This document shows positions 3,930-60,482 of a stretch of DNA of 64,000 bases, one piece after another (the first letter of the stretch is position 1; each line of letters begins with the position of its first letter). This DNA comes from Callorhinchus milii (taxonomy: Eukaryota). The notes beneath the pieces were generated by a model. It saw nothing but the letters and a program-made list of their open reading frames with translations. It searched no databases and was not told where the DNA came from. The stretch spans positions 7,440,001 through 7,504,000 of the forward strand of contig NW_024704764.1 in NCBI RefSeq assembly GCF_018977255.1, in the 5' to 3' direction. A program made the position numbers and the translations under genes.

Positions 3930-34383
<30,454 letters not shown>

Positions 34384-38066: not shown

Positions 38067-38760
<694 letters not shown>

Positions 38761-39655: not shown

Positions 39656-41168
39656 TAACGTTCAATGGGGGCGGGTGAAACTAGGGGCAGAAAGACCAAG
39701 AGAGGGACCCAGCCACTGAGCCACAAGGGCAGCCACTTCCATAAGGTCTCCACAAAGACCCATGTTTTTTGTTTCTGGAGTGCACTGACCAACAACTGAA
39801 ACATGTTCCATGTCTCGTCTGAAGGCCGGCACCTCCAACAGCACAGCGCTCCCCCAACACTGTACTGGAGTGTCAGCCTGGACTCTCTTGAGTTCAAAAG
39901 CACTCGTCCCCTAACCCTGAGAAAAGACGCTTCACATCCAGAACCGAGCCCCAATTATTCACATCGTCCTTTCCTTCGTTTCTACCTCCGTCCTGACCAA
40001 GGGAGGCTGTGACTAACAATAGAATTGGAAGCTGAGTGGGGATTTTGTAGGCTTAACATGTGCAACCAGCTTCTGCTGCTTAGTTCAGGGGATTTATTCT
40101 AAATATAGATAGCGTTGCGTCAACTATGTGAATGTTGCCAGATTAACCCCTTGCCTGCTGCCAGTGATTACTCACACCTCATGCTGATCCCACGCTAAAC
40201 ATACTCCAGAGAGTCCCTGAGCATCCAAATCCCAAGCTTACACACACACACGCCTCACACACACACACACACCTCACGCCATCTCACACAAACCTCATGC
40301 CAGCTCACACAAACCCGCCAGCTCACACAAGCACACCCAATGCAAGTACACACCACCTCACATGCACCTCACACCAACTTACACACATCTTTCACCCGCG
40401 CACACACCTCACACCAGTTCAGACACACACACACACACACCCAGCTCATATACGCACACCTGACACTAGTAAACACTACCTCACACACACACCAGCTCAC
40501 ACACACCTCACACACCTCACGCCAGATCACACAGCTCACACACAACTTCCACGTATCTCACACCAGCTCACAATCATGTTGAACGTATAATCCTAATTTC
40601 CCGTGATGGAAACAAGCAGTTCCCATGTCAACAAACTTCCACACCATCAATCCCCCACTGCATCACTTGCCCATTCCACACTGCAGTGCCATGCACCACT
40701 CAATCATCTACTCCTCTCCCACATCAACAAGCACCACTGCATCCCCTGCTTCTCCCCAACGGATTACCATGCTGCAATATGCATTCCCCACTGCATCACC
40801 CGCCTGTCCCCCATGCAGGGCCAAACACCCCTGCATTGGCGAGGTGTCAGACTCCTACTCACACCAACGTCACCTCCTACGTCAACAATGGAAAGAGAGA
40901 CATCTGTCTTGGTCAGTGTGTGGCCTTGGTGCTCATTCCTCCAACCCGTATGTGCACACGAAAGTCAACAGCGTGCAATGTCCCAATCAGAGCGACCCAT
41001 GTGCCCACACTATCAATGCCAGGCACCTGCAGTTTGTGCCCATTGCTTGGCGCGATGCCTCACAGCGCCTGGTCGCTGGCAATCATCACGTGCCGCCCAC
41101 TTGTTTACCATTGGGAAGCCCAGCTCCTAGCGGCATCAGTCGCTGGGCACACTGGCTCAGAACAGGAC

Positions 41169-41564
41169 ATGGTCACTTTGCCATCCTCCCCTGATCTCAG
41201 GAGGCTGCGTTGGGTCCTGGCAGCATGTCTGATGTTGACTCATTCGGCAGTGCCCGACCTGGCGAGAGACAACGCTGTCCTGGCCAAGAGCGAGGCTGAC
41301 TATGTGTTGGCTGATTACTGGGGTAGAGGCTGCGTCGCTGAAAACGGATTCGTGTTTGCGGTCGGAGCCAGATACTACCCCAGTTCAACAGCTTGTCCCT
41401 GCACCTGCACCGAGGAGGGGCCGGTGTGCACCAAACCCGACTGCCCTAGAATCCACCCTCGCTGCATCCGTGTCACGTACCAAGGCTGCTGTCCACGGTG
41501 CCAGAAGATACGCAAGATGTGCGAATATGGGGGCCGAATGTTCAAACCCTTCCAGGAGTTCTTG
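41169..41564 (+). CDS. Brorin/VWC2-family protein, coding exon 1 (signal + first vWC domain); start uncertain
   Basis: DYWGRGCVAENGFVF...CPCTCTEEGPVCTKPDCPRIHPRC...CCPRC...CEYGGRMFKPFQEFL matches the VWC2/VWC2L pattern; donor gtaact. A possible alternative acceptor lies at 41200. Confidence 0.88.
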
Positions 41565-41894
41565 GTAACTTTCCAACTCTTTGTGGGGGAAATGTACTGC
41601 TGCTTTTAAACTGCTTTGCAATCGATGTATTTTTTGTCTTACAGTACTATGTCTCCCTTCTGTTCCTGCAGACGAGGTGTTCTGATGGCTTAGCAAGTTT
41701 ATCTTACAGAAATAATAATAATTTGGTCACTTCAATCCACGCTGTTTGTGGGACACTGCTGTGCGCAATTGGCTGCTGAGTTCCACCCACAATATATAGT
41801 CAATTCACTTTACAGTATGTTCTGGGAAAGAGTTTGAGACGTCTCAAAGGTGCTACATCGAATGCAAGGATTATTATTTTTATCTACTGAATCT

Positions 41895-42200
41895 CTTTGA
41901 GCTACATATTGGAAGTTTGCAAGTTTCATGTCCTCGTCTGTGCTCGATTACTGATCTCAGCGAAGATGCGACTTGTAGGATTTGCAATGAGCCTCTGGGC
42001 TCTTGGGTTTGAGAGGGGGTAAATTTGACAGCAGTCTCGTCATTGATCACTATTCAGAGACCTACCTGCTCATAAATGCACGGGTGAATGTTGGTGAGGG
42101 CGGGATCAGGACTTGCCTGAATGCTCCCAATGTCCATTAACCCATCTTGACAGCACGATGGAGCTGGTTGATGGACCGGTGGATAGTCTAATGGGAGCGC
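41895..42200 (+). mobile_element. Ancient LF-SINE-like repeat
   Basis: gtctgtgct...ctgatctcag...tgatcactattcag...ggtgagg.c.ggatcagg resembles a recalled vertebrate LF-SINE-like consensus. Confidence 0.35.
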
Positions 42201-42964
42201 GTTCTCAGTGTAGGCACCTGAACAATCAGCAAAACCACAACCGCAACCGAACCGTGGCGGCAAAACATTTGGGCCAAAAATTCACAACTTTCTTGTCATT
42301 TAATTTGTGGATCTTTTGAACGGGAAAATGTCAGCTGAGGCAGGATGATGGCAATAATGATCCTTGCATTTTATAGAGCGGCTTATCGCATCTTCGAGAC
42401 ATCTCAAAGCGCTCTCATGATCTGCTCTGGGTCTGCTCCCTGTAAGTAAGGTGGCTGTCGTTGTTGTCTTTTCAAGCTAATTTGCCAGGCATTGACTCCT
42501 TTCAATGCATTGCGCGTGGGCGGCACTGAAATCCTTTGCCAACGAGCGACTGCGGTATTGACAAAAGGTATGCGGTGCAACGGCGTCACCTGCCAACCAC
42601 AAGGTGGTACTGCAAGAAACATCCAGTGAAGTTACCACCACCATCGCATTGCCCTGAGCCACGCCCTGCGCTGCCCGAACTACCCCTCCGCTGCTTCAGA
42701 CCGCAATCCTGCCGTGCGCCATCGGCTGCCGCGTTTTGCGCCCCACGCACGCAGTCGCCACGCTTTTAGAGTAGTGCAGTGGTCAACGCTATTCTGTAGC
42801 ACGCCGCGAGTCGTCTCGAAGGTGCGATCAGGCGCGCTTATCAAACGCAAGGATTATTATCATCGACGCACGTGGCGTCCCGAGATTTTCGAGACGGAAC
42901 GTTTTGTCGCCGAGCCTGAATCCGTGAGATCCGGCATGAGCGTGAATGTCTCGTGTTCCTGCAG

Positions 42965-43094
42965 CTGTCTCCCTGTGAGAGGTGCCGGTGTGAAGCTAAC
43001 CGAGCCGTGTACTGTTTGACCACGGAATGCGCTCGTGTGCTCTGCGTCAATCCTTCGTATGAATCCAAACTGTGCTGCCCTATCTGCAAACAGG
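42965..43094 (+). CDS. Brorin/VWC2-family coding exon 2
   Basis: LSPCERCRCEANRAVYCLTTECARVLCVNPSYESKLCCPICKQG; cag|..|gtaagt. Confidence 0.92.
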
Positions 43095-43471
43095 GTAAGT
43101 GACTAACAGAGTAAGTGGAGCATCTTGGCGTTAAATAAGCGGCTGCTTTAGCTCAAACATGATGTTTGCGAGTGTGCTGGCTTCCTCGGGATATACTACA
43201 TTTGGGAATGAACAGCACTGCCTTTTCCCACAGCGCCTTAGAACAACAATTTGCACTAATTGAATATCTTTCAGAACGAGATATGTAGCTTGTTGTGGGA
43301 AGAGACTGAGCACTGGAAAAATTCTGGATAATCTGGAGCTCATACCACTAGTGGTCCTTCATTGTTAGTAAAATCACTACATAATTAGTACAACTAACAT
43401 AATTATACGTTTCTTGTATTGTATTCTTTCTACAAGTAAGTTTAATTTCCTGATGTTTTCTGTCACTGCAG

Positions 43472-43683
43472 GCCCTAACTGTTTTGCAGGAAACATCATT
43501 ATCCCTGCTGGTGTGAAAGTGGAAATGAATGCGACTACGCTTTGCTACTGCCCATACAAGGATGGCTCCTGGGAACCCCAGCAGCAAGCTACCTGCATTG
43601 CACGCGGCAGAAGGAATGTCCATCATGATATTCGGAAGGACAGCCACGTGGATTTGTGGAGAGAATGGGAAGAGGTACCGTAG
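43472..43683 (+). CDS. Brorin/VWC2-family coding exon 3 to stop
   Basis: GPNCFAGNIIIPAGVKVEMNATTLCYCPYKDGSWEPQQQATC...EEVP*. Confidence 0.92.
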
Positions 43684-44771
43684 CCCCATTTCCTGTGCTA
43701 CGCTGCTCCCCGAGCAGAAACAAGCATTTAAACTTACTGTCGGCAATTGTGGCTAAAACTGCGGGTCAAGTTCCCCCGTACAATGTCTCTTAGTAGCTAT
43801 CGTTCGGAGTCAAACGTGCTTTTCTGTTGTCTGTTACTGATGAACAGCTTATGGGTGTTCCAGTCACATACCTGTGCTCATGTGTAATGTATCGTTGCTG
43901 GATACGGATTCAAAACCTTCCACACTTTTTACAGATTGCTGGGCATTTATTGTAAAAAAAATAAAAGTTGTTCGGTGGTAGATACATTTGAACAGAGTTG
44001 TTGCAAAGTCCACGCATGAACTTTTTTTTGCACTGCCTGGAATTCATGATAAATAACAATAAAGAATGCCCCTGTACCATAAGCTTTATGTAAATTGGTA
44101 TCGTCCTGTAGTCTCCAATTATTGGCCAAATATGACCATGATACAACTATTTAATGTTATAAATATTATCTGGTTTCTCACTGAGTTTGTGACATCAGGA
44201 CAGTACACCATCACTGTGGTGCAGGACTAGAATGCACGCATTCAATCGTTCAAATACTCTGCACAGACGAGTGATTTAGTCATGGTAACATAATGAACAG
44301 CGAGATGCAGTTTCGCTGTGAGTGGAGAGAGCTGGAGGAGAACTTAGTGTAGAACAATTCAAATCCTGATATCTGATGCTTAGTTCAACGATCATACAAT
44401 AGGTTTGAATAATGAAAGGACTGTCTGACAGAGCTTCATGCTAACATTGAACATTAGACAACGTGCAGATAAGTAGACAAGTCAGGTTTATAGGATGGTC
44501 ATTAAATGCAGGTTGCAACAATTTGAATCTTATTAGCAGAGCATTTACATTCAGAAATTTTCACAGCCATGTGTTTTCAACTATTGCCCCTGGTATAGAT
44601 ACTAGTAATTATTACAGTGTGTACAAATACATCTTGTGGGACAGTAATCTTACCAATAGCAGGGCTTATTTGGGCACAACAGGTGAAATTATTGTTTTGT
44701 TAAGAGAGCAGCACTGATCCTTCAAATGAATATCACATCAGAAGGCTAGATTTATGCAGGGGGGGCACATG

Positions 44772-44869
44772 CTAACACGCTGTGGCTCCATAGAAATTAA
44801 TCCTGATACTGGTACAGGGCAAGCAGTTCACATCGTTAGTGGGGCTGTACATCCCATGATCGCAAACAA
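44772..44869 (-). CDS. ZPBP2: ZPBP2 exon 8 to stop
   Basis: VVCDHGMYSPTNDVNCLPCTSIRINFYGATAC*. Confidence 0.92.
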
Positions 44870-47800
44870 CTGTGGAAGAAAAAGCAAAGACAAGTATTTA
44901 GTGTTCCCAGCAACGGAAATATTCTCATTTCAACAAAACGCCTTCCTAGATATTCAACACAAAACCTCTTCCGACTGTTTGGAAATTCCATTACAAAAGC
45001 ATAGCCTAAAGGTGAGATAGCTCAGTGATCTAACTCACAGCTACACAAGTGAAAGTTCCTCATGGTCTTAGCCTGTGCAGCCATTTTGTCTTCAAATTTA
45101 AGATGAGTGGGGAATTTTTAAATTTGGAAGCCAATTGTACAGTTCTTAAAAATAAACCAACCTCCAAATGAGGTTCAAATTTAATAATATTCCACATTCT
45201 GTACTATCTTAGATTTTAAGACAAGGTGAGGACAAGTGGAATTGCAGGCCTGGCATGTGGGTATGTTCCAAAAGCAATCTCATTAGTCTCACAATTGCTA
45301 TGGACATATGCAGAGAATTGTTAAGAAACTCCATTCTACTTTCAAATAATGCCATGGGGTCATTAACATCCAACAACAACAAATTACAAATGTACGTAAC
45401 AGGCTGGCAGAACCTTTGGTTTAACATCTCATCCGAAGGATAGCACCCGCAAAATGCCGTGCTCCACAGGACTGCACTGGAGTGACAGCCTAGATTTTGT
45501 GAGTTGGAGATTCGTATGCGGGGCTTGAACCCACAACCTTCTAACTCAGAGGAGAGAGTGCTGCCAAAATGAGCCAGGCTGACATCTAAGATGTGTATAA
45601 AACACGCTGTCCGTTAATCATCTTTCCCCTCTGTGAGTTCCCAGCCTCTCTGATACCTCTTCCGAGGTCCAGTGAGCTGGTTGCACCCAGCATGAACAGG
45701 AAATAGATTGTGTTGGAGCTGCGTTCCCACAGGTAGGTGTAATGTAATTCTGATTAACGGAAGAATGCCTTATTAAGAAATGGCACTGTATTCTAGTTGA
45801 GTTGGGATATAAGTAACCTAAATAGCAATCAAGACTCACCACAGCATTCGGAGCAATCTGAATGAGTGATCTTATTCTTCCCAAACCCAGGGCGACAGTG
45901 GTCTACTCGTGACACTTGCAGAGAGTTGTCAATGTAGTAGAAGGTGGGCAGTGCATTTTTCATTCCTGCCAATACAATGCTCTGCTTCATAAAGAAAGCT
46001 TGCACACGATTCCGAGCCTAAAACACAATCACACACAGGCTACTATTGTATGTTGCTAAGCTCTTGTGCTAGTGAACCAGTTCCCACTCCTTAACATTAG
46101 TGCATAGCTAGTGGCTCCCACCTCAACGCTACAGCCTCCAGACCCTAAAGCCCAGCTCGAGGCCCCAGAATTTAGCTTCCAGAGCTTAGCTCCCGATCCC
46201 AAACCAACCTCCAACTCCCAGAGCTCAGCCCCTGGCCCCCAAATCCTCCTCAACATACATTCTCTACTCTTCTGTTAAGTTCATCTTGACAGTTATGTTC
46301 GAGTTTTTTGCACAATGCTTCCCATCCATTGGCAAAAGGATCAACTGCAAATTTGAAGAAGAAAGAAATTATTACTTTTTTAGTTGGTGGTTGATCTTTC
46401 ATGGATTCTAACAAATTTAATATTAAGAGACAACTGCAACATGGGCTAGACATGAGTACTTTGGACCAGTCATTTGCAAAAGTCTTAACACTCTTACACA
46501 CATTACATTATTGTTAACATAATGGAATGTGTTTATGTCTGTTATGTAAACCCCTTGTGGTTACCGGAGTGTTCCTGTGTGTTTCGGTCTGTGTTGGCCA
46601 ACTATGCGATTTTAGCAGGTTAAACTAGCAGTCACCCCAATGCACACTCTGTGGTTCCCAAGCCTTGGCTCTTGCCAACCTGCTTCTAATACTCTCTGGA
46701 ATTAGGTAAGAAGTAATGTGCACTTCAATCCAGAAATGGGAATTTCCACTGTGCATAGAACTCAATTTGTTTTGGATACTCTTAAGCATAATGATAGGTT
46801 TCCATATGTATCAGACACCTGGCTGACCAAACAAAAAATTGTCCATATTGTAAGCTTCTTGTCGTAACAGACATGTTCCCATGAGTTTCTGTCTTAGTTA
46901 CAAGTGAGTTCCTATGTATTTTTTTCAGCATTCTTCTTTATCTACTGACATATTCAGTTAATTAAATACTCTAAAACGACACAAACATACTTCAACCTTT
47001 CAGACAACATTAAGAGTGCTTTACAGATACAAACAGTAATATGAAAATCACCTCTGAAATTAATGAAGAGCTCGGTTACAAGGCCTTTGTGTGGTACTCT
47101 AACGACATGGCAATGCATCCTGATGTCAGATATTCTGCAGGCTAGATCATCAATCAACTCTTTTTCCACTGAATTTAACTTGTGAAAGAACTGACTGTTA
47201 GCAGGCTCATGGCAACCTTTGGTGTGATAGCGGGTCGCAAACATAAACGAATAATCGGGCTCACGATAAGCTGGAAGAGTTCAATAAAAAGTTTCTTTAT
47301 GAGAACTTCTGGGAATGAATAATACCAAAGTATTCTTATAAATGATAATAATAACAACAATCCTTGCATTTGTTATGGCACCTTTCAAGTCAGAAGATCT
47401 CAAATTGCTTCACAGGATTTACTGCAGTGATTATGTATTTTGTAGGTGAAATGTGGCAGCCAATTTGATCACGAACAGCTATGACACGAAGGACCAAATG
47501 GAGCATCGTTGGGATAAGCTCCCTTCTCTTTTTAAGTAGTATGAAAACAAAAAAAAGGAAGTCATTTTCATGCCTCATTCAAAGCAGAACCTCCTAAAAT
47601 GCAGTGCTGCCCCAGTATTGTATTGGAGTCAGCCCAGATTGAGTTCAAAATCCCAATTTGGGCCTTCACAATCCACAAACGTTTAACTCAAGAGTTGATC
47701 CAGGCTGACACCTAAATAAGACCTTATGATAAGGTAGAATTAAGAACCTGTGAATGAAACAGCACTGAAAGCTCACTGCCATTGAATGCATTTGCATCCG

Positions 47801-50800
47801 TGCTGTGTAGGCAGCAATACTGTCCTGTATGGGCAGGTGCCCTATCCTGTGGAGGCAGCAGCACTTATCTATGCTTGTGTAGGCATACTGTGCCATCTCA
47901 GATTCAGTTAGGCCAGTATCCTCTGCATAAACTTAGTTTATTCTAATAAAGGCCATTTTAAGCATTCAAAAATGATAAGCAGAAATCCAAGATGGTAGTG
48001 GCCAGGCTTTAAAGACCGGCTATGATTATTCAGAAATGAGGGACTATGAGGGTGAATAGATATTTCAAAACACTTTTTTTAAGCAACCATTACTCCTTAA
48101 ATACGGAACGGAACTTGTTTAGGAAAGCTGCAGTTTTCACTTCATGGTGTTTTCTGCGGAGGACTTTCCAAGGGGAAAGCTGAAAGAGACCTGGAGGGGG
48201 TTTGCGGTGAGGGGGTTAGTTAACTCATTATTTACCATACACTGAGAATTTCATATCAAGGAATATTTCTTTCTTCTTTTCAATATTCTTGTAGGAAACT
48301 GTACAGGTATAGTCTCCCGACATGAACTTTCTGAATGATTTCAATATGAGTCGTCCTGTTTCAGTGATCTTCGCATAGGACTCCCCTGAAATGCAGCACA
48401 AACAATGCTGTGAGAAAAATAATGTTTAAAAAGGTCACCACCCTTTGACTCATTAAAAAAAACAGCTTAAGGCTCTGATGGGACAGCGAGCGGTAGGGTG
48501 GGTGGAGGCATGAGATCATATGGGCCGAAGGGCCATATGATTTTTTTTTACAAAAAAATTAAGTAAAACACATTTTTATTTTAACTCTCAATTGTGCCAC
48601 TTAACTGGTAATTTAGAATTCCAACAAAGTGCAGAAACCCTTGTAACAGGTTCCCAAGGTGCCTTGCAATGCTAATTACAATTACTGTTGTGTGAGTAAT
48701 GGTAAAAATGTGTTAAAACAACGTAACACAGAGTCTCTGCAGATTGAACCTCACCATCAACTGCAAAACAGCAGTAATGAAACAACTGGCAGGCCACTAT
48801 AAAATATCTACAACCTTTCGATGAAAAAGCTCCACTAATTCATTCCCACCTACTTTCTAACCACACAGTAAAACAACTTACACAATGTTAATGATGATAT
48901 CAACAAATTGTCTGTCCTGCCATGTGCACAAGGTTTGGCTGAAGCCCTGGAAAAGTTAAAGAGCATCTTACCTTTTATATTTTTTCCAGATGGTCCAATC
49001 CATATAAAATATGGATCTATTAATTCATGCTCTTTAAGATCCTCAGTTGTACAGAGAAGAATTGGACTGTCATGGTAAATCTTCACATAAACTTTTACTT
49101 GAAAAAAAAGTTAATAATTATTGTCATATGATATAACTTGATGTTAAACATTAAAGTTCTTGGGAAAAGTATCTTTATTAGCCAGGAATCATGTGTCTGT
49201 CCTTCCCTGTGGAGAATATTTGTTCTCCCTCCCTGTATGAGGTAATTAGCCTTCTCCCTGTGGAGATTACATAGTCTTTTTTAGGGTGATAGTAGACGTG
49301 TTTTCTGCTCTGATGTTGAAATTCGCTTTGTGAGATACACTTATAGGATTATGAACTATAAGTGGCATTTTCACGAAGTGAAATGCTGCCTGTTCACATT
49401 GGAGAAATGTTTTTGAATCTAAACTTAGCTGGACACTAAACGAGAATACTCCAAGTAGCAGTCCAGCAAGTTACTTCACGGGAAATGGGAGGCATCACTG
49501 AAAAAGTACATCAACTGGAAACTTAAATCCTCAAATTATCTTTGATATACTGTGTGTAGAAAAGCCCCTGCTTGAATCAGTCTTACTTTTAAGTTACCTG
49601 GTTTGCTGTTGCTGCTGCCGAAAATTTTTGAAACAGATCTGTCAGTTCCATTTTTTTTGACTTGAGGATCAGTGGGCGCACCAACTTTCACTGCATGTAA
49701 CAAAGTTTAAAACTGTAACTAATTTTATTTATCCGCTTGAAAAACACTTATGTTTATTTTCAATATTTTTGAATTGAAGAGTGTTAAAGAACCAGACGTG
49801 AAACACGTTATATCAAATGTATCAAAATGTAAGGATTATTATTGTACCTCAATTGGCTGCTCATATTATTTTGTTTATAAAACATTGGTTACATAGATCA
49901 GCTGCTACATCTGTTTGTATTAACATTCACTTAATTTCCATTCAATTATATTTTGTAAACCTCGGATACATTTGTTTTTCAACGTGAAAAGAACTTTATT
50001 AACAAGTTTTTGTTGCGGGAACGTTACCCGCTCTTCCAAAATACTTGTAATGTTTTGGTTGAAACGTGGCTCAACCTGGCTCAGTTGGTCAGACTCTCAC
50101 CTCTGAATCAGAAGGTTCTGGGTGTCAAGCCCCGAGTCGGGTCTTTAAACTCATGGTACTCTTTGACACGCCATACGTTACTCGAGAAGAGAAGTGAATG
50201 TCTCCTGGCGTCCTGGCCAACAGCAGCCCCAAATAACACCAGTCGCTCACTCACTTCATGGCGGTTCGTTGGGACACCGCCGTACCCAAATCGGTTTCTC
50301 GGTTTGCCCGCAAAATACAAAGCCACCGCACTTTCAACGGTAAAAGCGCTCGGTGTGAGCACTTTTCCCTGCATTCGATACGGCGTCTTACCACGTCGGC
50401 GCGACGTCTCAAAGCGCTTCGCGGTAATCCGCCAGGGCGGCAGCCGGCCGCGTGCAGCGGCGACCCACAGACCGCCGCGGCGCCAAGGGACCAAATTATT
50501 AACTCGATAAGGTTTAGCGCTTCGACCTCATGACTTCAGCCTAAACACCGTCCACCCCAAGGCGGTCAGCTTGGGGTGGGGGGGGGGGGCGGGGGTGAAT
50601 GGGGGGGTGGTGCGTACCCGCGTCTCTCCCTCTTCCGGACCCGACGCGCCTTTGACCCCCACACGGGGGTCAGAGTCGCGCTTCGCCTTCGACCTGTTGA
50701 CTTTCAAAACACCCGGGAAACTTCCCCTCCTCGCGCCGCTGGCCGAAGGGTCTCTCTTCGTCCCCACCCACCACCACCACCATTACCGTGACCCCTCACC

Positions 50801-51073
50801 CCCCGGGGGTTACACACATATACACACAGTCCCAGAAACAGGAGGAGGCCATTCAGGCCCTCGGGCCTTGTTCCGCCATTTTATAAGATCACGGCTGACC
50901 AGTACCTCGAGTGACCTTCCCCTCCCATCCCTGACCGCACGAGTATCTCTCTCTCTCTCCCTCTCTCTCTCTCTCTCCACCGCCACCTTACCTAAAGCGG
51001 TGGAGAGAAGGATATTGTAGACGGCGAACGCGAGCAGTTTGCGGTGCCGGTGACCGGGCAGCTCTCTCCTCAT
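44772..51073 (-). CDS. ZPBP2: Zona pellucida-binding protein 2, whole gene span (8 exons, 343 aa)
   Basis: Eight AG/GT exons total 1032 nt in frame. Ig-like and Sp38 motifs: IDPYFIWIGP, AYREPDYS, VDPFANGW, CRPGFGKN. Head-to-head with an Ikaros-family gene. Confidence 0.9.
45840..46017 (-). CDS. ZPBP2: ZPBP2 exon 7
   Basis: ARNRVQAFFMKQ...LPTFYYIDNSLQVSRVDHCRPGFGKNKITHSDCSECC. Confidence 0.93.
46259..46344 (-). CDS. ZPBP2: ZPBP2 exon 6
   Basis: VDPFANGWEALCKKLEHNCQDELNRRVEN. Confidence 0.92.
47052..47270 (-). CDS. ZPBP2: ZPBP2 exon 5
   Basis: AYREPDYSFMFATRYHTKGC...DLACRI...CHVVRVPHKGLVTELFINFR. Confidence 0.93.
48236..48385 (-). CDS. ZPBP2: ZPBP2 exon 4
   Basis: GESYAKITETGRLILKSFRKFMSGDYTCTVSYK...KFSVY. 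Confidence 0.92.
48972..49097 (-). CDS. ZPBP2: ZPBP2 exon 3
   Basis: VKVYVKIYHDSPILLCTTEDLKEHELIDPYFIWIGPSGKNIK. Confidence 0.92.
49598..49690 (-). CDS. ZPBP2: ZPBP2 exon 2
   Basis: VKVGAPTDPQVKKNGTDRSVSKIFGSSNSKP; phase 1-1. Confidence 0.78.
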
Positions 51074-51880
51074 CGTCGTCGTCAGCGCCTCTTTTTTTTC
51101 GTCGTCTCTCTCTGGTTGGCCGACAGGACGGCGCGGCCTCGCACCAACCGCCAACCGCACGCGCCGCCGTCGACCGCCCGCCCGCGCCTGCGCACGCGCA
51201 CTGCCTCGGGTGGGAACGCCCGGACGTCACCGCGCATGCGCCCGGGCGGGGGGGAGGGTGGGGGGGAGCACTTCGCCTGCGCGTGATTTTGTGAAAGCGG
51301 GAAAGAGAAAGCACGTGATGGGGGGGAGGGGGGGAAGCGGGAAAGAGCACTGCGTCTGCGCCTGCGCCATCCGCCCCCGCGCACCAACACGCGCGCGCGC
51401 TTGAACCCCCCCCCTCCCACTTCCCCCCCTCCCTCGCATTCGATCGCTCATTCATGACAGCAGTCACGTGCCCGACCCTTTCGCCCCGCCCCATAGTTTT
51501 TCCCCGCCTCCTGCCCCGCCCGCTTGCCCCACCCTCGGCCCCGCCCCCTACCCCTGCGCCGCCCCCTCCTCTACCCCGCCTCCTGCCCCGCCTCCTCTCC
51601 TGCCCCGCCCCCTGCCCCGCCCCCCTCCCCGCCCCCTCAGCAAGCATTTCCAGGCGTCCGCCGGCCGGTCTGACGTCACCGCGCACAAATATCCCAGCTA
51701 CGTCTGGCGTCACGGGAGGGAGGGAGGGAAAGGCGCGCCGTGGGATTCTCCCGCCCTTCCGCGCGGTGTGAATGTATCCATGTGAATGGGGGCAGAGCGG
51801 CAGCACGTGGAGCCGCGAGGAGAGAGCAGGTCAGCCTCGCACACAGCACAGCCCCCGGGCACACGGCGGGGCCGGGAATG
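50250..51880. promoter_or_regulatory. CpG island / bidirectional promoter between ZPBP2 and the Ikaros-family gene
   Basis: Very CpG-rich. NRF1-type motifs GCGCCTGCGC (51184, 51358) and GCGCATGCGC (51232), CRE TGACGTCA (51671), CACGTG boxes, and many CCCCGCCC GC boxes at 51480-51640. Confidence 0.85.
50992..51073 (-). CDS. ZPBP2: ZPBP2 exon 1 (signal peptide)
   Basis: MRRELPGHRHRKLLAFAVYNILLSTAL then donor GTAAGG; phase 1. Confidence 0.72.
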
Positions 51881-51889
51881 GGGGGGGTT

Positions 51890-52370
51890 CTGTGTGTTGG
51901 AGGTGTGTGTGTGTGTGTGTGTTGTGGGGGGTCTGTGTGTGTGTGTGTGTTGGGGGTGTGTGTGTGTTGTGGGGGGTGTTGTGGGGGGGCTGTGTGTTGT
52001 GGGGTGTTGGGGGGTTGTGTGTGTGTGTGTTGTGGGGGTTGTGTGTGTGTGNNNNNNNNNNNNNNNNNNNNNNNNNNNNNNNNNNNNNNNNNNNNNNNNN
52101 NNNNNNNNNNNNNNNNNNNNNNNNNNNNNNNNNNNNNNNNNNNNNNNNNNNNNNNNNNNNNNNNNNNNNNNNNNNNNNNNNNNNNNNNNNNNNNNNNNNN
52201 NNNNNNNNNNNNNNNNNNNNNNNNGGTGAGGGGTGTTGTGTGGGGGGGGCTGTGTGTTGGGGGGTGTTGTGTGTGTTGGGGGGTGTTGTGTGTGTTGGGG
52301 GGTGTTGTGTGTGTTGGGTGTTGTGTGTGTGTGTGTGGGGGGGTGTTGTGTGTGTGTGGGGGGGGGTGTA
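51890..52370. repeat. (GT/GGT) low-complexity tract around N gap 52052-52224
   Basis: Read directly from the sequence. Confidence 0.9.
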
Positions 52371-52389
52371 TTGGTTATTTTTTCTCCAG

Positions 52390-52507
52390 GATGAGTTGGA
52401 AGCCATAATAATCGTTGCATTTGGATAAATAGACTGAATGACTTTAGGTTTCCAGGGACAGGAGCCCCATCATTGGAAAAGGAAAACTGTTTTGAGAGTT
52501 GTCAAAA
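52390..52507 (+). other. Candidate 5'-UTR exon of the Ikaros-family gene
   Basis: Strong acceptor tttttctccag and donor gtaagt in unique sequence. An upstream candidate donor CAG|GTCAGC lies at 51829. Confidence 0.45.
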
Positions 52508-55500
52508 GTAAGTGTGTGTGTGAGTGAGTTTTTTAAAAAATATATATACATATATATCCAGACCCCGAGGGATTTAATTAATTGGTTAAAGCAGGATGTG
52601 TTGTGTGTGTGTGTGTGTGTGTGTGTTGTGTGTTAATTAATGTTGATCATGAAAGCTCGTGTAGGTGGCGTCGTAAAATCACGTAGATTACAAACGGGTT
52701 AAATCAGATCAATTAGACGGTATGTCAGATGAAGTGCGAGTGCGCGAGTGTGTTTTTTTTAAAAAAGAAGAAAAAACGCGCGCGTTTGTGTCGTGGACAC
52801 TGAACCCCACGTATTACTGATTAACAGCGTCGAAACCGCCTTTGACGGAGGGCTTTGTACACTTTGGAACGTGATGGCGTTCAGTGATAGTCGGAGAGAG
52901 AAAACGTGCAGCAAAGTGGTGATTTGTGGCCAAAGTCGTTTGAGCGACAAAGTGCACGTTTGGAGAGGTTGATTTGTTACAAGTCTTGGTGGTTGGCTGT
53001 GGGATTTCACGAGCTCATCTTTTTTTTTTCCAACCCCCCCCCCCACCCCTGTTGTTGCTCTGCTCCCATCGGGACGTTTCTTTGGGTTGCTATCATTTGA
53101 ATAATGCACTGTATTATTTACCTGGTGACCCATATGGTGTGTGTGTGTGTGTGTGTGTGCGCGCGTTACAGTATTGGTGATTGCAAGTCTACCTCTGTCA
53201 CATCGGAAATATCCATGTCCTTTTCAGCTGAGGAAATAAAAAAAAATGACACGTACAGTAGTTCTTTCTTTCAAGGTTCGATAAGATCAGACTCTTCTCG
53301 AGAATCACTCTACTGGAGTTCAACCGATAGCAGTGTTTATCTCGGTTGGGTTTATTAGACTCATTGCAGTGTTTCAAAGAATGAGTTCACGGTGCCTATA
53401 AGAGTGTCTGTACTTACGAGCACTTAAAAGAGCTGTAACGGTTGGTGAAAAGTAATTCAGCAATGTAAGCTTAACCATCTGCGCTGCTCACATGCAATGA
53501 ATGTTACTCTACTTATTGGGATGTAACGCGTTAGTTTAGTAAGCGTTGGATTACTTATTGGGATGCAGTGTAATTTTTTTTAAAAAAAAGAGAGATCGGC
53601 CAAGCCCTTCAAATGCGATGTTCTTCTCGAGAATTGTTTCTGGAGCTGATAGACCGTTGAGCTGCTTCCTCTGGGATACGAGGGAGACGCGGCTTTGGGA
53701 ATCTGCCCACGGAAGATGGGGCTAAAAGAATCCAAAGTGTGGATCCATCCCCAAACGGTAGACCCATGAAAGTAGATTCAAAATAACTTGTGACTACAGT
53801 TCAGGATAGACTGAACGGGTCGATCTCAACCAGGAACAAGTTGATAGACAATAACTTTACAAGCAGAAGCAAGTTAATGGCTAATAACTCTTCATTTGTA
53901 ATCAGTATTTTGATGCTTTCGGCTGGTATCTTTGTTGACTGAAGTGTTGACTTACTCTGGTGCTTTCCAAGCCGCGACAGTAAGGGAGGATTTCTGTGAA
54001 TTTCTACAGATTCTGTTAAAACTGCTCAGCTGCTTTGCATCACCATCCAAATTTAGACTTTAATTATTCAACCACCGGTATAGGAGGCCATTTTGAGGAT
54101 CGATTACAACGGACAGCAACTTTGCACTTCATATTATTGTGATAAAAATGAGAGCGAGAGGGTATTTAGCTTTCCTCAAGACACAGCTCATGAAATAATA
54201 GAATTTTTAAGGGGCATTTCACGTTGAGACGACTTATCAAACTGCAACTGCGTGTGTGTGTGTGTGTGTGTGCATATATGGTAGGGTGCGGGTGCGGGTG
54301 GGGGGAGAGCCGGTCGAAAAAGGAAGTTTGACCTGCTTTGTACAGCTCAATGGGTAATGCTGCACTCGCTGGTCTATTGGGGGAGCACGATGGGACCTTA
54401 ATTAAGGCTACAAGAACAAGAGGAGGCCATTCATCCGGTTTATGGCAGATCTTTCAGTTCCATCTCCAAGCATTGAACTCCTTTTTAACCGTCTCAATTG
54501 ATCGGCCTGGACGGCCCTCTGGAGCAGTGCCATCCAAATTCTCACAGCATTCGTGTGAATGCATCGGTTCACAAAGACACTTTGGAATTATTATAGCAGG
54601 TTGAGTAACTGAATTATAGTCGTCGATAAATTAGAAAATTACACTGGAGATGTGAAGGAGGAGTACCAAACGTTGCTATTTATGTAGTCAACTTTCTCAG
54701 ACCTGGTTGCGGGTTTAGCTTTCTTATTAAGTGCTTTGTGGCTGCAGACTGTCTGAGGAAAGAGAGAAGCAGAGTGCTGACCAGTAGTGTGAATGCAGTT
54801 CCATTAAATAAAAGTTGCTTAAAAAAAAAAGTGCGTTGAAAGAACCAAACAAATGAGAGAAAAACAACAAGATATTGAAAGCAAGTCGAAGAGAAAACAA
54901 GGCGACAAAGCAAAGCAGGGGGAAATGATTTGATTTAAAAAATAATACTATTTTGAGAAGGATATGCAAAGATTTGGCTTTCAAGTTCGAGATGAGCAAA
55001 GCGCTCGCGGACCAGTCAATGAGTGGAGTGAGGACGGATCGGGGCTGCAAATGGAAGGTAAAATGCTACACCTGCTGGAAATCTGAAACCGAAGTCGCTT
55101 TGGGCGCACGCGGCAGGTCGGGCAGCATGAAAGAGAGGAAAGCGAGTTAACGTTTTTAGATCGATGACCTTTCATCAGAACGATGACCTTTCTGCTGGAT
55201 GCAGTCCGTGGGTCGTTCTCGATAACACTTAGATCCTGGTGTAAGATGACCCTCCGTTGCAGTGCAGGGGCGGTGGGTGGTGTGGCACTGTCAGGGTTGC
55301 CGTCCGTTGGATGGGGCGTTAAACTGAGGTCCCACTGCCTTTTCATGTGGTCAGCAAAGATCCCACGCACTATTCGAAAAGTGAAGGGAGTTTCTCCCAC
55401 TTTACAGACCAACAAATCCCCCCCACCCCAATAAAATTGTTCACTCACTCCATGGTTGCTGTTGGCACATTACTCTTTGCAAACTGTCCGCCGCATTTCG

Positions 55501-56391
55501 CCCACAAAGTACACAATGCGCACTTTACGGTATATCATGTGAAGCGCTTTTAAACGATTCGATGAAGCGATAAGGAGCTAAAATCGAATGCAAGGATTAT
55601 TATTATCACATCCTCGAGAACAGCTTAAAGCGCTTCACAGGATATACCGTAAAGTGGTGTAACTGTGTGTCTTTTGTGGGAGAAATACACATACTACTGC
55701 AAGTTCTTAACTATTAATTTGATTTACCTCAAACCGTGGGTGTTAAAACCCTTTACAAGCAGGTCATAGAACTATAGAGCAATTTCATTAATCATTGACC
55801 TATATTACTGCTGGGGTGAGTTTCTCTTCACTGAAGTTACTGTGAAGTGTAGTGATTGTGCATTTGTACACAAATGTGACAGCCAACTTTTCACACAGCC
55901 ATGTCCCACAAACAGCCCAGAAGCGAGTGACCAATCTTATTTGCCAGATTGTTGGTCAGGACACCAGGAGAAACTCGCTTCCCTTTTTGAATAGCATCAT
56001 CGGATCTTTAATGTCCATCTGAACAGACAGGACCTCGGTTTAGTGTCTCGTCCAAAGGAGGACACCTCCAGCAGTGTCAGCCTAGATTGTGAAGGGTGAG
56101 ATATAATGTACCTACAGCTGGGAAATTGACAGCACGTTGACCTAAGTGGTAGTGACAAGTTAAGCCCGTGTCAAGTTATCAGGAGTTTACTGTAGTTTCA
56201 AGTCGTTGTTTTGGTGCAAATACCGCAGGAAACTCCTGCGTTTTATTTATTCTAGAAAGATTACGTGAAAGAACGTAACAGCCTCGACTCTAGTTTCATT
56301 CGGTGTGGAGTAAATTCCATCCCCTCTGTAGCAATAAGTTTTCTTTTAGGAAAAATGATATGATCAGTATTCTTGTGGGACATAGTTTGGA

Positions 56392-56737
56392 ACAGTGGTG
56401 AGAGCACTCGCCTCGCCAGCGGGAGACCTGGGTTCCATTCCGGGCAGGGCGAGATGTTGGGCAGGTTTCCTTACTGTTTACTTAGCAGTACGTAGGAACC
56501 CAGTTGTTAGTCGATTGGTGGATCACTTTTCCGGGGATAAAAATTCCTCCCCCCAAAAATTATTTGGTCACTCAGCCCACGAGTGTTTCATGGGGACGCT
56601 GCTGTGCGCAATTGGCTGCTGCGTTTCGCCCACAAATACACAGTCAATTCACTTTACAGTATATTCTGTGAAGCGCTTTGAGGCGTCTCGAAGACGCGAA
56701 AAGCACTATATCAAACGCAAGGATTATTATTATTATA
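56392..56737 (+). mobile_element. tRNA-derived SINE
   Basis: Head cagtggtgagagcactcgcctcgc through (TTA)n tail. Confidence 0.88.
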
Positions 56738-59057: not shown

Positions 59058-59420
59058 GTAATAATCCTTGCATTTGATATAGTGCCTCATCGCATCTTCG
59101 AGACGTCTCAAAGAGCTTCACAGAATATACTATAAAGTGAATTGACTGTATATTTTGTGGGTGAAAGGCGGCAGCCAATTGCTCACAGCAGTGTCCCACA
59201 AACAGTCGTGGACTTAAGTGACCAACTTTTTTTTCAAGGAATTATTAACCCCGGAAAAGCGATCCACCAATCGACTAACAACTGAGTTCCTACTTACTGT
59301 TAGGTAAACAGAAGCGTGTGGAGTAAGGAAACCTGCCCAACATTTCGCCCTGCCGGGAATCGAACCCAGGTCTCTCGCTTGCAAGGCGAGTGCTCTAACC
59401 ACTGAACTACAGGACTCCAC
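59058..59420 (-). mobile_element. tRNA-derived SINE, full length
   Basis: Consensus reverse complement, close to 36786-37159. Confidence 0.9.
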
Positions 59421-59600
59421 TGCAGAAACGGGGTTCACTTCCCCCTCCCTTCCTTCTTCAGCTTCCTGCCCCAGCTCAGGGGTGCCAAGCCAGCAACATG
59501 AAGAGCTTTGAGATATTCTCCCAACGTAAAGGTGTTGTGTAAATGTCTTATGTTGCATTTCTTATATTTGTTTAGGATTTTATATATTTATTTCCAGAAT

Positions 59601-59649
59601 ATGACTGATATGGGAGGAGAAGAGACTCAAGAAATGTTTCCGCCAGAAG
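59601..59649 (+). CDS. IKZF3: Ikaros-family zinc finger (probably Aiolos), first coding exon (exon starts 59598)
   Basis: tttccag|aatATG..GAAG|gtaatg. MTDMGGEETQEMFPPE resembles Ikaros N-termini (recalled METEEAQEM / MDADEGQDM). The IKZF3 call rests on synteny with ZPBP2 and ERBB2; no zinc fingers are in the window. Confidence 0.62.
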
Positions 59650-60482
59650 GTAATGCTTACTTGAGTTGAACTACTTTCCAGATACATGGCTGCTTTGACA
59701 AAGGAAGTCCTGTTAAATTATTGTGCCACTAGCAATAGCTAACACCTCGACAGTATAGCAAAGCGTGTATGTCAGAGCAAGAGGTCTGCTTACAGATGGA
59801 AACCACAGATAATGCTATTCTCACTGAGACCAACTCCTCCATTTGGGAGATCAAGATTTCAGCGTGCCAGAAAGGAGATAAATGTAACACTAATTATTAA
59901 AGCTGCAAATAAAACAAGCTATGTCTATTTTAGACTATTACATGAGGACCTCAGGCCTCTGAGCTGAGCTGACTTATATTTCATGCATTTATTTGTGGTG
60001 CTATTGCATTAATTGGTGGTGGAAGACAACCATTAAAATTAATAATAATAAATAATAATAAAACCTTGCCTTTGATGGAATGCTTTTCACGTCAGGAGGG
60101 AGGACGTCTCTAAGTACAGCACAAGCTTTATTGTAAAGTGTCGACTGTGTTTTGTAGGTGAACCCAGCAGCCAATTTGTACACAGCAATGTCCAACAACA
60201 GCCATGGGGTGAATGAGTAATTTTATCTGCTGGGGATTGTTGGGCAGGACACCGGTAGAAGCCAGCACTGCAATAGCGTGCTAGCCGAGACCAATGTGGT
60301 GCTTAAACCCACTAACTTCTGATTTGGAGGCGAGAGTGCTTCATAGTCCTGCTTGAAAAGACAAAACTACTTAGACTTGAAAAGATGGCCTCTTGAACTG
60401 ATGACACCAGTTGAATGAACTTTGAGTTCTTGATTCATTTAACATTTAAATACTTTTCATATTTTAACTTTTTGATGAGCAG

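What the first reader, a model, noticed from the sequence alone, without database searches (positions are those of the whole stretch)
41169..43683. A third Brorin/VWC2 paralogue retained in the ERBB2-ZPBP2-IKZF3 block
Seen: an intact ~245-aa secreted vWC-domain gene lies tail-to-tail with ZPBP2, followed by a + strand Ikaros-family gene. Known (recalled): human VWC2(+)-ZPBP(-)-IKZF1(+) lies on the EGFR arm, VWC2L lies near IKZF2/ERBB4, and I know of no VWC2 gene at ERBB2/IKZF3/ZPBP2. Inference: this is a whole-genome-duplication copy (ohnologue) lost in mammals, a candidate uncharacterised BMP antagonist or AMPA-receptor partner. It may already be annotated generically as brorin-like in other non-mammals.
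Basis: partly seen in the sequence, partly recalled or inferred. Interest (0 to 1): 0.82.

Follow-up and report, generated by a model that had tools for sequence, protein, structure and literature searches.

The report
Third Brorin-family gene in elephant shark
This is a real, expressed elephant-shark gene for a small secreted cysteine-rich protein, a third relative of the BMP-blocking brain proteins Brorin and Brorin-like that fishes kept and land vertebrates seem to have lost; databases already hold it under misleading generic names.

Summary
Window 41169-43683 (+) is the full coding region of a three-exon, 245-codon gene of Callorhinchus milii. RNA contigs join the exons exactly at the predicted GT..AG sites. 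All three Pfam VWC2L-type domains are present. NCBI already models it as XP_007899634.1, 'VWC2-like', with a probably false N-terminal extension.

A maximum-likelihood tree of 56 proteins puts it in a third jawed-vertebrate clade (support 100/100). That clade is separate from VWC2 (100/100) and VWC2L (100/99) and sister to VWC2 (96/87). It holds cartilaginous fishes, ray-finned fishes (zebrafish name si:dkey-283b1.7) and coelacanth. None of 74 named members is a tetrapod.

The clade has lost one cysteine pair of the C-terminal domain and gained a tail.

The block assignment is only partly tested:
- The upstream receptor kinase leans ERBB2: 4 of 7 exons score best against human ERBB2.
- The downstream minus-strand gene is ZPBP-family, paralogue untested.
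- No Ikaros zinc-finger exon lies in the window.

Separate VWC2 and VWC2L genes in this genome could not be checked. BMP antagonism is inferred by homology only. Six paper searches found no description of this clade. Verdict: a new, unnamed member of a known kind, of moderate interest.

The parts
41142..41168 (+). Minimal 5' untranslated part: start of the spliced RNA contig up to the ATG
   Evidence: The X3 contig begins at 41142 (table 8). No contig of X3 covers about 40796-41141.
41169..41564 (+). Coding exon 1 (132 codons): hydrophobic N-terminus, first VWC2L-type domain, first half of the second
   Evidence: Translation. Pfam VWC2L_1st E 9.2e-20. 100% identical to XP_007899634.1. RNA joint at 41564|42965.
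41565..42964 (+). Intron 1 (1400 bases, GT..AG); holds an abundant interspersed repeat at about 41669-41880
   Evidence: Joint 'skips 1400, GT..AG (cut +1)' in X3. Summed contig depth is 15497-30881 in bin 41669-41835 in all 4 runs.
42965..43094 (+). Coding exon 2 (43 codons plus 1 base): second half of the second VWC domain
   Evidence: Translation. Pfam VWC2L_2nd E 9.5e-11. RNA joints on both sides.
43095..43471 (+). Intron 2 (377 bases, GT..AG, phase 1 in a Gly codon)
   Evidence: Joint 'skips 377, GT..AG (cut +1)' in X3, X4 and X7.
43472..43683 (+). Coding exon 3: C-terminal VWC2L_C domain with 4 cysteines, then a 28-residue tail ending in Pro; stop TAG at 43681-43683
   Evidence: Translation. 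Pfam VWC2L_C E 7.3e-18. Cysteine counts.
43684..44104 (+). 3' untranslated region (at least); AATAAA at 44058
   Evidence: The X3 contig runs to 44104. Poly(A) signal scan.
44775..49110 (-). Context: ZPBP-family gene, tail-to-tail. Exons seen at 48853-49110, 48231-48425, 45832-46017 and 44775-44897.
   Evidence: Pfam Sp38 3.2e-11 and 2.7e-12; EGF_Sp38_C 1.1e-07 and 6e-08. Paralogue (1 or 2) not tested.
15806..34383 (+). Context: ERBB-family receptor kinase gene upstream (exons tested between these coordinates). Leans ERBB2.
   Evidence: PDB comparisons of 7 exons: ERBB2 best in 4, EGFR in 2, ERBB4 in 1. The last exon matched only the EGFR tail weakly; no ERBB2 match was returned.

Best explanation
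Window 41169-43683 (+) is the complete coding region of a transcribed, correctly spliced gene of the elephant shark (Callorhinchus milii). It has three coding exons and 245 codons.

The product has a hydrophobic leader, two chordin-type VWC modules and a small C-terminal cysteine module. This is the architecture of Brorin (VWC2) and Brorin-like (VWC2L).

The gene belongs to a third orthology group of jawed vertebrates, whose zebrafish member carries the placeholder name si:dkey-283b1.7. This group split from VWC2 before cartilaginous and bony fishes diverged. It is kept in cartilaginous fishes, ray-finned fishes and coelacanth, and was not found in tetrapods.

Shown: gene structure, transcription, domain content, clade membership, and the clade's loss of one cysteine pair with gain of a C-terminal tail.

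Inferred: the protein is secreted and binds BMP-type ligands outside the cell as an antagonist, as reported for its two relatives. The altered C-terminal module may change partner choice.

Inferred: it arose with the duplication of a block that also gave the ERBB, ZPBP and IKZF paralogues.
For: Gene model and expression:
- Translations and splice sites.
- Spliced RNA contig 41142-41563 | 42964-43093 | 43471-44104 in X3; the intron-2 joint stands in 3 of the 4 runs laid.

Family:
- Pfam VWC2L_1st, VWC2L_2nd and VWC2L_C, each above its cut-off.
- All 24 core cysteine columns are invariant across 44 aligned jawed-vertebrate proteins (17 of the third clade, 14 VWC2, 13 VWC2L).
- AlphaFold core pLDDT 82-96.
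- Foldseek best matches are VWC repeats of NEL (E 8.4e-05) and the collagen IIA VWC domain (TM 0.62 on the target).

Identity: 100% match to XP_007899634.1 of Callorhinchus milii.

Clade:
- Careful ML tree of 56 rows: third clade 100/100 (18 rows), its cartilaginous-fish part 100/99, VWC2 100/100, VWC2L 100/99, VWC2 plus third clade 96/87.
- The AU test rejects cartilaginous-fish genes plus VWC2 as one clade (lnL 33.2 lower, p 4.5e-05).

Derived traits:
- 4 instead of 6 cysteines in the C-terminal module in 18 of 18 tree rows and 78 of 81 HMM-assigned proteins. VWC2 has 6 in 113 of 115 and VWC2L in 41 of 41.
- Ciona and both lamprey genes have 6, so the loss is derived.

Introns: read-through fragments of all three clades break after 'EEF+1' and after 'CK.G', the two intron positions of this gene. 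Two introns at similar places are reported for mouse and zebrafish brorin (PMC5407822, passages).

Function of relatives: BMP antagonists and AMPA-receptor interactants (PMC5407822 abstract and passages; PMC6502786 passages).
Against: - No binding or activity data exist for any member of this clade, so the function is inferred by homology only.
- The clade evolves faster than its relatives. The window's end branch is 0.63 against a median of 0.15. It also lacks a disulfide that the relatives and the outgroups keep, so its partners may differ.
- The runs used are only guessed to be RNA ('RNA?'). That they hold cDNA follows from the intron-free joints. All come from one study, and the tissue is unknown.
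- Block origin is not shown. The ERBB neighbour is ERBB2-like in only 4 of 7 exons, the ZPBP paralogue is untested and no IKZF exon was identified.
- Absence from tetrapods rests on searches limited to the 8000 candidates sharing most words. No genome search was possible.
Confidence: 0.85

Rival explanations
1. It is simply the elephant shark's VWC2 (Brorin) orthologue, fast-evolving or moved, and cartilaginous fishes have no separate third gene.
For: No cartilaginous-fish protein fell in the VWC2 clade: none was among the best 120 of 445 hits listed. The local order VWC(+), ZPBP(-) mirrors the VWC2-ZPBP-IKZF1 order of human chromosome 7 (recalled). Linkage of brorin with ikzf1 is stated in PMC5407822 (passages). 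Identity of the gar third-clade protein to bat VWC2 (57-59%) is as high as to shark third-clade proteins (57%).
Against: The cartilaginous-fish genes group with the gar, teleost and coelacanth third-clade genes at 100/100. The AU test rejects a clade of them with VWC2 (p 4.5e-05). They share the derived 4-cysteine C-terminal module.
Confidence: 0.03
2. It is a third paralogue, but it arose by a local or segmental duplication of VWC2 in an early jawed vertebrate. It is then not an ohnologue of the two rounds of whole-genome duplication, and its place beside an ERBB gene is secondary.
For: The tree dates the split only to before the crown of jawed vertebrates. The neighbours' paralogue identities are not settled. 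Cyclostome genes do not pair one-to-one with the three clades.
Against: The gene sits between an ERBB-family gene and a tail-to-tail ZPBP-family gene. This is the same kind of neighbourhood as VWC2 has in human and zebrafish (recalled; partly PMC5407822), which a block duplication explains most simply. The intron positions are kept, so it is not a retrocopy. In 4 of 7 exons the kinase is closest to ERBB2, the paralogue expected beside a sister of the EGFR-linked VWC2.
Confidence: 0.12
3. The protein is not mainly a BMP antagonist. It works through other partners, for example as an extracellular interactant of AMPA-type glutamate receptors or of a scavenger receptor, or it has a clade-specific ligand.
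For: Brorin and Brorin-like were found as AMPA-receptor interactants whose postsynaptic role is unknown (PMC6502786, passages). VWC2L bound CD36 in a cell-surface screen (PMC9578707, passages). The third clade has lost a disulfide and gained a tail in the C-terminal module.
Against: The two VWC modules, the parts that bind BMPs in chordin-type proteins (established knowledge), keep all 20 cysteines and many flanking residues. No data for any partner exist for this clade.
Confidence: 0.3
4. The locus is a decaying or silent copy, and the open frame is kept by chance.
For: The end branch is long (0.63). Public models carry odd N-terminal extensions.
Against: The frame is open over 245 codons across three exons. 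All 24 family cysteines are kept. Spliced contigs stand in 3 of the 4 runs laid. The one coding difference seen in RNA, 43671 A>G, is synonymous. Orthologues are kept in 16 elasmobranch entries of one 90% cluster.
Confidence: 0.01

Closest known systems
VWC2 (Brorin)
   Same: Same three-module architecture (Pfam PF23333, PF23334, PF23331). The 24 core cysteine columns are shared. There are two coding introns at the same places. It is the sister clade in the tree (96/87). It also has a ZPBP-family gene as a neighbour (recalled for human).
   Different: It is a separate clade (100/100). VWC2 has 6 cysteines in the C-terminal module and ends a few residues after the last one; this gene has 4 and a 28-residue tail. 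VWC2 has a long N-terminal region (proteins of about 300-335 residues against 245 here). VWC2 is present in tetrapods.
VWC2L (Brorin-like)
   Same: Same architecture, similar size (222-258 residues) and the same intron positions. It is the name NCBI gives this gene.
   Different: It is a separate clade (100/99). VWC2L is very slowly evolving (end branches 0.01-0.16 against 0.63 here) and has 6 cysteines in the C-terminal module. Elasmobranchs carry it in addition, on other contigs.
Zebrafish si:dkey-283b1.7 and its fish orthologues (uncharacterised)
   Same: Same orthology group by the tree, through carp, Sinocyclocheilus, reedfish and coelacanth proteins that carry this name. Same 4-cysteine C-terminal module and a tail ending in Pro.
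   Different: The teleost tails are longer and acidic and end in '..IP'; the elephant-shark tail ends in '..VP'. About 47-52% identity to the window's product. The zebrafish protein itself was not among the rows I examined.
Chordin-type VWC proteins (chordin, CV-2, NELL, collagen IIA propeptide, CCN3)
   Same: The VWC fold of the two main modules. Foldseek matches NEL VWC repeats (E 8.4e-05) and the collagen IIA VWC domain (rmsd 2.5-3.0 over about 60 columns).
   Different: There is no sequence-level match to any solved chain (0 hits at E up to 1 for the gar orthologue). The protein is much smaller and has a family-specific C-terminal module.

Membership tests
Brorin family (VWC2/VWC2L-type proteins) | N-terminal VWC2L-type domain (Pfam PF23333) | tested here: met
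   E 9.2e-20, 70.7 bits against cut-off 27, profile 1-40 of 40.
Brorin family (VWC2/VWC2L-type proteins) | Second VWC domain (Pfam PF23334) | tested here: met
   Exon 2 alone: E 9.5e-11, 42.2 bits against cut-off 27, profile 17-55 of 55. The first 16 positions lie in exon 1.
Brorin family (VWC2/VWC2L-type proteins) | C-terminal VWC2L_C domain (Pfam PF23331) | tested here: met
   E 7.3e-18, 64.7 bits against cut-off 27, profile 1-39 of 42. It has 4 rather than 6 cysteines.
Brorin family (VWC2/VWC2L-type proteins) | Secretion through an N-terminal signal peptide | tested here: inconclusive
   There is a hydrophobic stretch after Met 41169, predicted as a helix at residues 139-155 of P0001. Orthologues of 226-240 residues start at the same place. 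No signal-peptide predictor was available.
Brorin family (VWC2/VWC2L-type proteins) | Two coding introns at conserved positions | tested here: met
   RNA joints at 41564|42965 and 43094|43472. Read-through fragments of all three clades break at the same two places. PMC5407822 passages.
Brorin family (VWC2/VWC2L-type proteins) | Binds BMPs and inhibits BMP signalling | not testable with these tools
   Known for mouse and zebrafish Brorin and Brorin-like (PMC5407822; PMC6502786). No data exist for this clade.
VWC2 orthology group | Falls inside the VWC2 clade | tested here: not met
   The VWC2 clade (100/100, 15 rows) excludes it. The AU test rejects the joint clade, p 4.5e-05.
VWC2L orthology group | Falls inside the VWC2L clade | tested here: not met
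   The VWC2L clade (100/99, 13 rows, among them 4 elasmobranchs) excludes it.
Third clade (si:dkey-283b1.7 group) | Falls inside the clade of gar, teleost, coelacanth and elasmobranch genes | tested here: met
   100/100 for 18 rows. The nearest rows are Carcharodon and Stegostoma.
Third clade (si:dkey-283b1.7 group) | C-terminal module with 4 cysteines and a tail ending in Pro | tested here: met
   The window's product has 4 cysteines and ends in ..VP. 18 of 18 tree rows have 4 cysteines. Pro is the last residue in 94% of the 17 aligned clade members (16 of 17).
Ohnologue of the ERBB2-ZPBP2-IKZF3 paralogon | The neighbouring receptor kinase is the ERBB2 orthologue | tested here: inconclusive
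   Best human chain per exon. ERBB2 in 4 of 7: 89.2 vs 72.3 EGFR; 71.3 vs 64.5; 104.3 vs 95.2; 54.0 vs 45.7. EGFR in 2. ERBB4 in 1. No tree was possible.
Ohnologue of the ERBB2-ZPBP2-IKZF3 paralogon | The neighbouring ZPBP-family gene is ZPBP2 | not tested
   Family shown by Pfam. The Atlas search of one exon gave only generic Ig fragments. No protein search was left.
Ohnologue of the ERBB2-ZPBP2-IKZF3 paralogon | An IKZF3 gene follows on the plus strand | tested here: inconclusive
   No C2H2 finger pattern in 50000-64000. The candidate exon at about 60483-60600 has no Pfam match.

The most novel reading that the evidence does not exclude
The three Brorin-family ohnologues were sorted out reciprocally. 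Tetrapods kept VWC2 and lost the third gene. Cartilaginous fishes kept the third gene beside ERBB2 and may have lost VWC2: no cartilaginous-fish VWC2 appeared in any listing. Ray-finned fishes and coelacanth kept all three. With one disulfide fewer and a new tail, the third gene would be a BMP or synaptic modulator with its own partner specificity. The divergent teleost zgc:113531 group could be the missing fourth ohnologue.
Probability: 0.2. Interest if true: 0.55.

Novelty: new member of a known kind. Interest (0 to 1): 0.42.

Why it matters
Brorin and Brorin-like are treated in the literature as a pair of neural BMP antagonists and AMPA-receptor interactants. Fishes, including zebrafish, carry a third gene that has no name of its own. 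Databases label it with the names of the other two. In reedfish, two different genes are both called 'brorin'.

This matters in three ways:
- Knock-down and knock-out work on brorin and brorin-like in zebrafish may be buffered by this third gene.
- The gene adds one more marker to the ERBB/IKZF/ZPBP paralogon used to study the early vertebrate genome duplications.
- Its loss of a conserved disulfide gives a natural variant for asking what the C-terminal module does.

It is not a new kind of molecule.

Tried and rejected
Rejected readings:
- VWC2 orthologue (tree; AU test).
- VWC2L orthologue.
- Silent or decaying copy.
- The longer public N-termini of 375 and 537 residues. The RNA contig starts 27 bases before ATG 41169, and orthologues start there. 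Contigs cannot prove a start.

Led nowhere:
- The PDB could not settle EGFR against ERBB2. EGFR kinase constructs fill the best 60 rows. No ERBB2 match was returned for the last exon, so the ERBB2 tail could not be compared.
- The ARF-like neighbour is uninformative for the paralogon. It is closest to ARF1 in the PDB. The Atlas calls it 'putative ARF1' at 0.98. Its 90% cluster is named ARL14.
- The Atlas search of a ZPBP exon gave only generic Ig fragments.
- No solved relative by sequence exists for the gar orthologue.
- Earlier notes of the scan hold nothing on VWC2, VWC2L, IKZF or ZPBP.
- Paper searches for a third paralogue found nothing:
  - 'brorin / VWC2L / paralog': 14 papers, 11 listed, none on it by title or start of abstract.
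  - 'dkey-283b1.7': 0 papers.
  - 'dkey-283b1': 0 papers.
  - 'vwc2l2, vwc2la, vwc2lb, brorin-like 2, vwc2b, vwc2a': 0 papers.
  - VWC2 / ZPBP / IKZF1 / ohnolog / paralogon / VWC2L: 15 papers, 14 listed, none evolutionary.
  - ERBB2 / IKZF3 / ZPBP2 / elephant shark: 31 papers, 10 listed, none relevant.
- Supplementary tables were closed and may list si:dkey-283b1.7 in expression data.

Not done:
- A search for VWC2 and VWC2L in this genome.
- dN/dS (no orthologous coding DNA).
- Tissue of expression (runs are coded).
Full report
WHAT IS THERE

The window is from the elephant shark, Callorhinchus milii. Exon 1 of the finding is 100% identical to the NCBI protein XP_007899634.1, 'von Willebrand factor C domain-containing protein 2-like [Callorhinchus milii]' (P0001).

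Read from the DNA and translated exon by exon, the gene has three coding exons:
- 41169-41564: 132 codons, phase 0.
- 42965-43094: 43 codons plus one base.
- 43472-43683: two bases plus 69 codons, stop TAG at 43681-43683.

Where a full-length protein was needed I used the public model P0001 that a tool returned.

Each exon alone hits one of the three Pfam domains that define this family:
- VWC2L_1st: E 9.2e-20.
- VWC2L_2nd: E 9.5e-11.
- VWC2L_C: E 7.3e-18.

IS IT EXPRESSED, AND IS THE MODEL RIGHT?

Thirteen public runs were listed for the stretch. None is on record as RNA; seven are guessed to be RNA. I laid four runs of one study on window 40500-45500 (5001 letters).
- Run X3 holds a 1186-base contig that lies on 41142-41563, 42964-43093 and 43471-44104.
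- Both joints are marked GT..AG with the cut one place to the right, which gives 41564|42965 and 43094|43472. These are exactly the predicted splice sites.
- The second joint also stands in X4 and X7, so it is in 3 of the 4 runs laid. X6 has a contig that starts at 43471.
- Intron-free joints show that these runs hold cDNA.
- The contig ends at 44104, 41 bases after an AATAAA at 44058.
- It begins at 41142, 27 bases before ATG 41169.

These are read through an open frame in a CA-rich repeat: 375 residues at NCBI and 537 in UniProt A0A4W3HP56. Three points favour ATG 41169:
- Orthologues of 226-240 residues begin with a hydrophobic leader at the place of Met 41169.
- In X3, two of the three depth bins between 40834 and 41167 are at zero depth.
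- The AlphaFold model gives low confidence for residues 1-130 and a helix over the hydrophobic stretch at 139-155.

Contigs cannot prove a transcription start.

Two differences from the window stand in the X3 gene contig. 43671 A>G is synonymous by my reading of the frame. 43915 A>G lies in the 3' untranslated region.

WHICH GENE IS IT?

Three searches collected the family:
- A profile of the first hits, run against 1.84 billion representative proteins, found 378 proteins at E up to 0.001; 150 were listed.
- A profile search of the 5.8-billion collection with third-clade proteins gave 118 proteins at E up to 1e-10 among 8000 scored candidates.
- A profile search with VWC2 and VWC2L proteins gave 445 proteins; the best 120 were listed.

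From the 433 proteins then held I chose 56 rows for full length and spread of taxa:
- 18 third-clade rows.
- 15 VWC2 rows.
- 13 VWC2L rows.
- 5 cyclostome rows.
- 3 rows of the teleost zgc:113531 group.
- 2 Ciona rows as outgroup.

Fragments and most teleosts were left out. No cartilaginous-fish VWC2 was available to include.

The careful maximum-likelihood tree (LG+C20+F+G4, 283 columns) gives these supports:
- VWC2L: 100/99.
- VWC2: 100/100.
- A third clade: 100/100. It holds the window's protein, four elasmobranchs (together with it 100/99), coelacanth, bichir, sturgeon, paddlefish, gar and eight teleosts.
- VWC2 and the third clade as sisters: 96/87.

Inside the third clade the order roughly follows the species tree.

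Holding the five cartilaginous-fish genes together with VWC2 costs 33.2 log-likelihood units, p 4.5e-05. I named the group after seeing the tree, but it is the hypothesis stated beforehand in the finding.

The tree tool warns that long branches meet at the VWC2 / third-clade join and at the outgroups. The sister relation and the root are therefore less sure than the three clades themselves.

WHO HAS IT?

Of the 79 named rows, 74 are third-clade by clade HMMs. By the organism names in the listing these are 6 cartilaginous fishes, 1 coelacanth and 67 ray-finned fishes. None is a tetrapod. The other five rows are VWC2 of a bat (2), a trout and a cod, and one hagfish protein.

One 90% cluster adds 15 further elasmobranch entries.

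Tetrapod VWC2 and VWC2L fill the listing, so tetrapods are well sampled. Their absence here is therefore meaningful, though it is not a genome search.

Several bony fishes carry VWC2 as well as the third gene: reedfish, eel, milkfish, arowana, medaka.

At least seven elasmobranch species carry VWC2L as well as the third gene, on contigs of different length. In Stegostoma these are 41.8 and 108.4 Mb; in Carcharodon 54.6 and 153.3 Mb.

I could not show that Callorhinchus itself has VWC2 and VWC2L. Neither was among the rows listed, and no cartilaginous-fish VWC2 was seen at all.

WHAT SETS THE CLADE APART?

All 24 cysteine columns of the two VWC modules and the core of the C-terminal module are invariant in all three clades.

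VWC2 and VWC2L have two more cysteines in the C-terminal module. The third clade lacks both:
- 18 of 18 tree rows have 4 cysteines there.
- Among proteins assigned by clade HMMs, 78 of 81 third-clade proteins have 4. The three exceptions look like faulty models.
- 113 of 115 VWC2 and 41 of 41 VWC2L proteins have 6.

The HMMs include this module, so the assignment and the count are not fully independent.

Ciona, both lamprey genes and the zgc:113531 group have 6, so the third clade lost a pair.

The clade also has a tail after the last cysteine. It is predicted disordered (pLDDT 50-55) and ends in Pro in 94% of the 17 aligned members (16 of 17).

The two intron positions are shared by all three clades. 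Read-through fragments from raw assemblies break after 'EEF' plus one residue and after 'CK.G'. The gene is therefore a genomic duplicate, not a retrocopy.

FOLD AND LIKELY MECHANISM

No solved structure matches the gar orthologue by sequence: 0 chains at E up to 1.

The AlphaFold model, built from an alignment of 49 sequences, has pLDDT 82-96 over residues 181-350 of P0001. Foldseek finds VWC repeats of NEL (E 8.4e-05 and 1.1e-04) and the collagen IIA VWC domain (TM 0.62 on the target, rmsd 2.5-3.0 over about 60 columns).

What is reported for the relatives:
- Brorin and Brorin-like are secreted, neural BMP antagonists (PMC5407822, abstract and passages).
- They are AMPA-receptor interactants of unknown postsynaptic role (PMC6502786, passages).
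- VWC2L also bound CD36 in a screen (PMC9578707, passages).

By homology, the most likely working of the elephant-shark protein is extracellular binding of BMP-type ligands through its two VWC modules. I put this at about even odds. The changed C-terminal module leaves room for other partners.

THE BLOCK

Downstream, on the minus strand, lies a ZPBP-family gene. Sp38 hits exons at 48850-49086 and 48228-48401. EGF_Sp38_C is split over 45829-46005 and 44775-44897. It is tail-to-tail with the finding: its last identified coding exon lies 1.1 kb beyond the stop codon.

Upstream lies an ERBB-family kinase. I compared seven of its exons with the PDB, leaving aside one tandem EGFR construct that scores twice.
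- Human ERBB2 is best in four exons:
  - 89.2 bits against ERBB4 73.4 and EGFR 72.3.
  - 71.3 against 69.5 and 64.5.
  - 104.3 against 99.9 and 95.2.
  - 54.0 against EGFR 45.7.
- EGFR is best in two. In these, ERBB2 is not among the best 60 rows, which EGFR constructs fill.
- ERBB4 is best in one ectodomain exon: 71.7, against EGFR 69.9 and ERBB2 67.5.
- The last exon matched only the EGFR tail, weakly (E 0.068). No ERBB2 match was returned.

This leans to ERBB2 but is no tree.

For IKZF I found no zinc finger in 50000-64000. There is only a CpG-rich stretch and a candidate exon with AG..GT borders at about 60483-60600, whose likeness to Ikaros N-terminal exons I can only recall, not test.

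The sister pairing of VWC2 with the third clade matches the EGFR/ERBB2 and IKZF1/IKZF3 pairings as I recall them. That is a lead, not a test.

IS IT KNOWN?

As a sequence, yes. NCBI, Ensembl/UniProt and ZFIN-derived names cover it in many species. The names are those of its relatives or a clone-based placeholder. Two different reedfish genes are both 'brorin'.

As a described gene, I found nothing. Six full-text searches gave no paper on a third paralogue. The zebrafish brorin paper discusses only brorin and brorin-like (passages).

VERDICT

- The block assignment is half tested.
- The function is inferred.
- It is a new, unnamed member of a known family, of moderate interest.

Noticed in passing
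window 38070-38636 (-): An intronless 189-codon ARF-type GTPase gene lies between the ERBB gene and the finding. Its best PDB match is ARF1 (217 bits). The exact protein is in public collections, and its 90% cluster carries the UniProt name 'ARL14' (V9L5F0). It may be a retrocopy. It says nothing about the paralogon.
   Followed up: partly
window 41669-41880 (intron 1 of the finding), with many look-alike stretches elsewhere in the window: An interspersed repeat collects very many RNA contigs in all four runs: summed depth 15497-30881 in one bin. Its translation recurs in ORFs all over the window. It is probably an abundant SINE-like element of this genome.
   Followed up: no
window 40297-41168 (+): A CA-rich, His/Thr-coding open frame runs straight into the start codon. 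Public models read it as protein (375 and 537 residues). These are probably annotation artefacts.
   Followed up: partly
proteins P0084, P0107, P0126, P0191 (teleosts): There is a further, very divergent group with the same three-module layout and 6 C-terminal cysteines, named zgc:113531 in seahorse. It branches outside all vertebrate clades on a long branch. It could be a fast-evolving fourth paralogue.
   Followed up: no
listings: No cartilaginous-fish protein of the VWC2 (brorin) clade appeared, while their VWC2L and third-clade genes are plentiful. This is either a limit of the listing (best 120 of 445) or a real loss.
   Followed up: partly
window about 60483-60600 (+): A candidate 118-base exon has a pyrimidine-rich AG acceptor and a GTAAGG donor and codes for an acidic, Pro-rich peptide. 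It has no Pfam match. It is possibly an early coding exon of the gene whose CpG island lies at 50.5-52.4 kb.
   Followed up: partly
names: NCBI calls both the true VWC2 (P0319, 317 residues) and the third-clade gene (P0417, 235 residues) of Erpetoichthys 'brorin'. In sharks, both VWC2L and the third gene are called 'VWC2-like'.
   Followed up: yes
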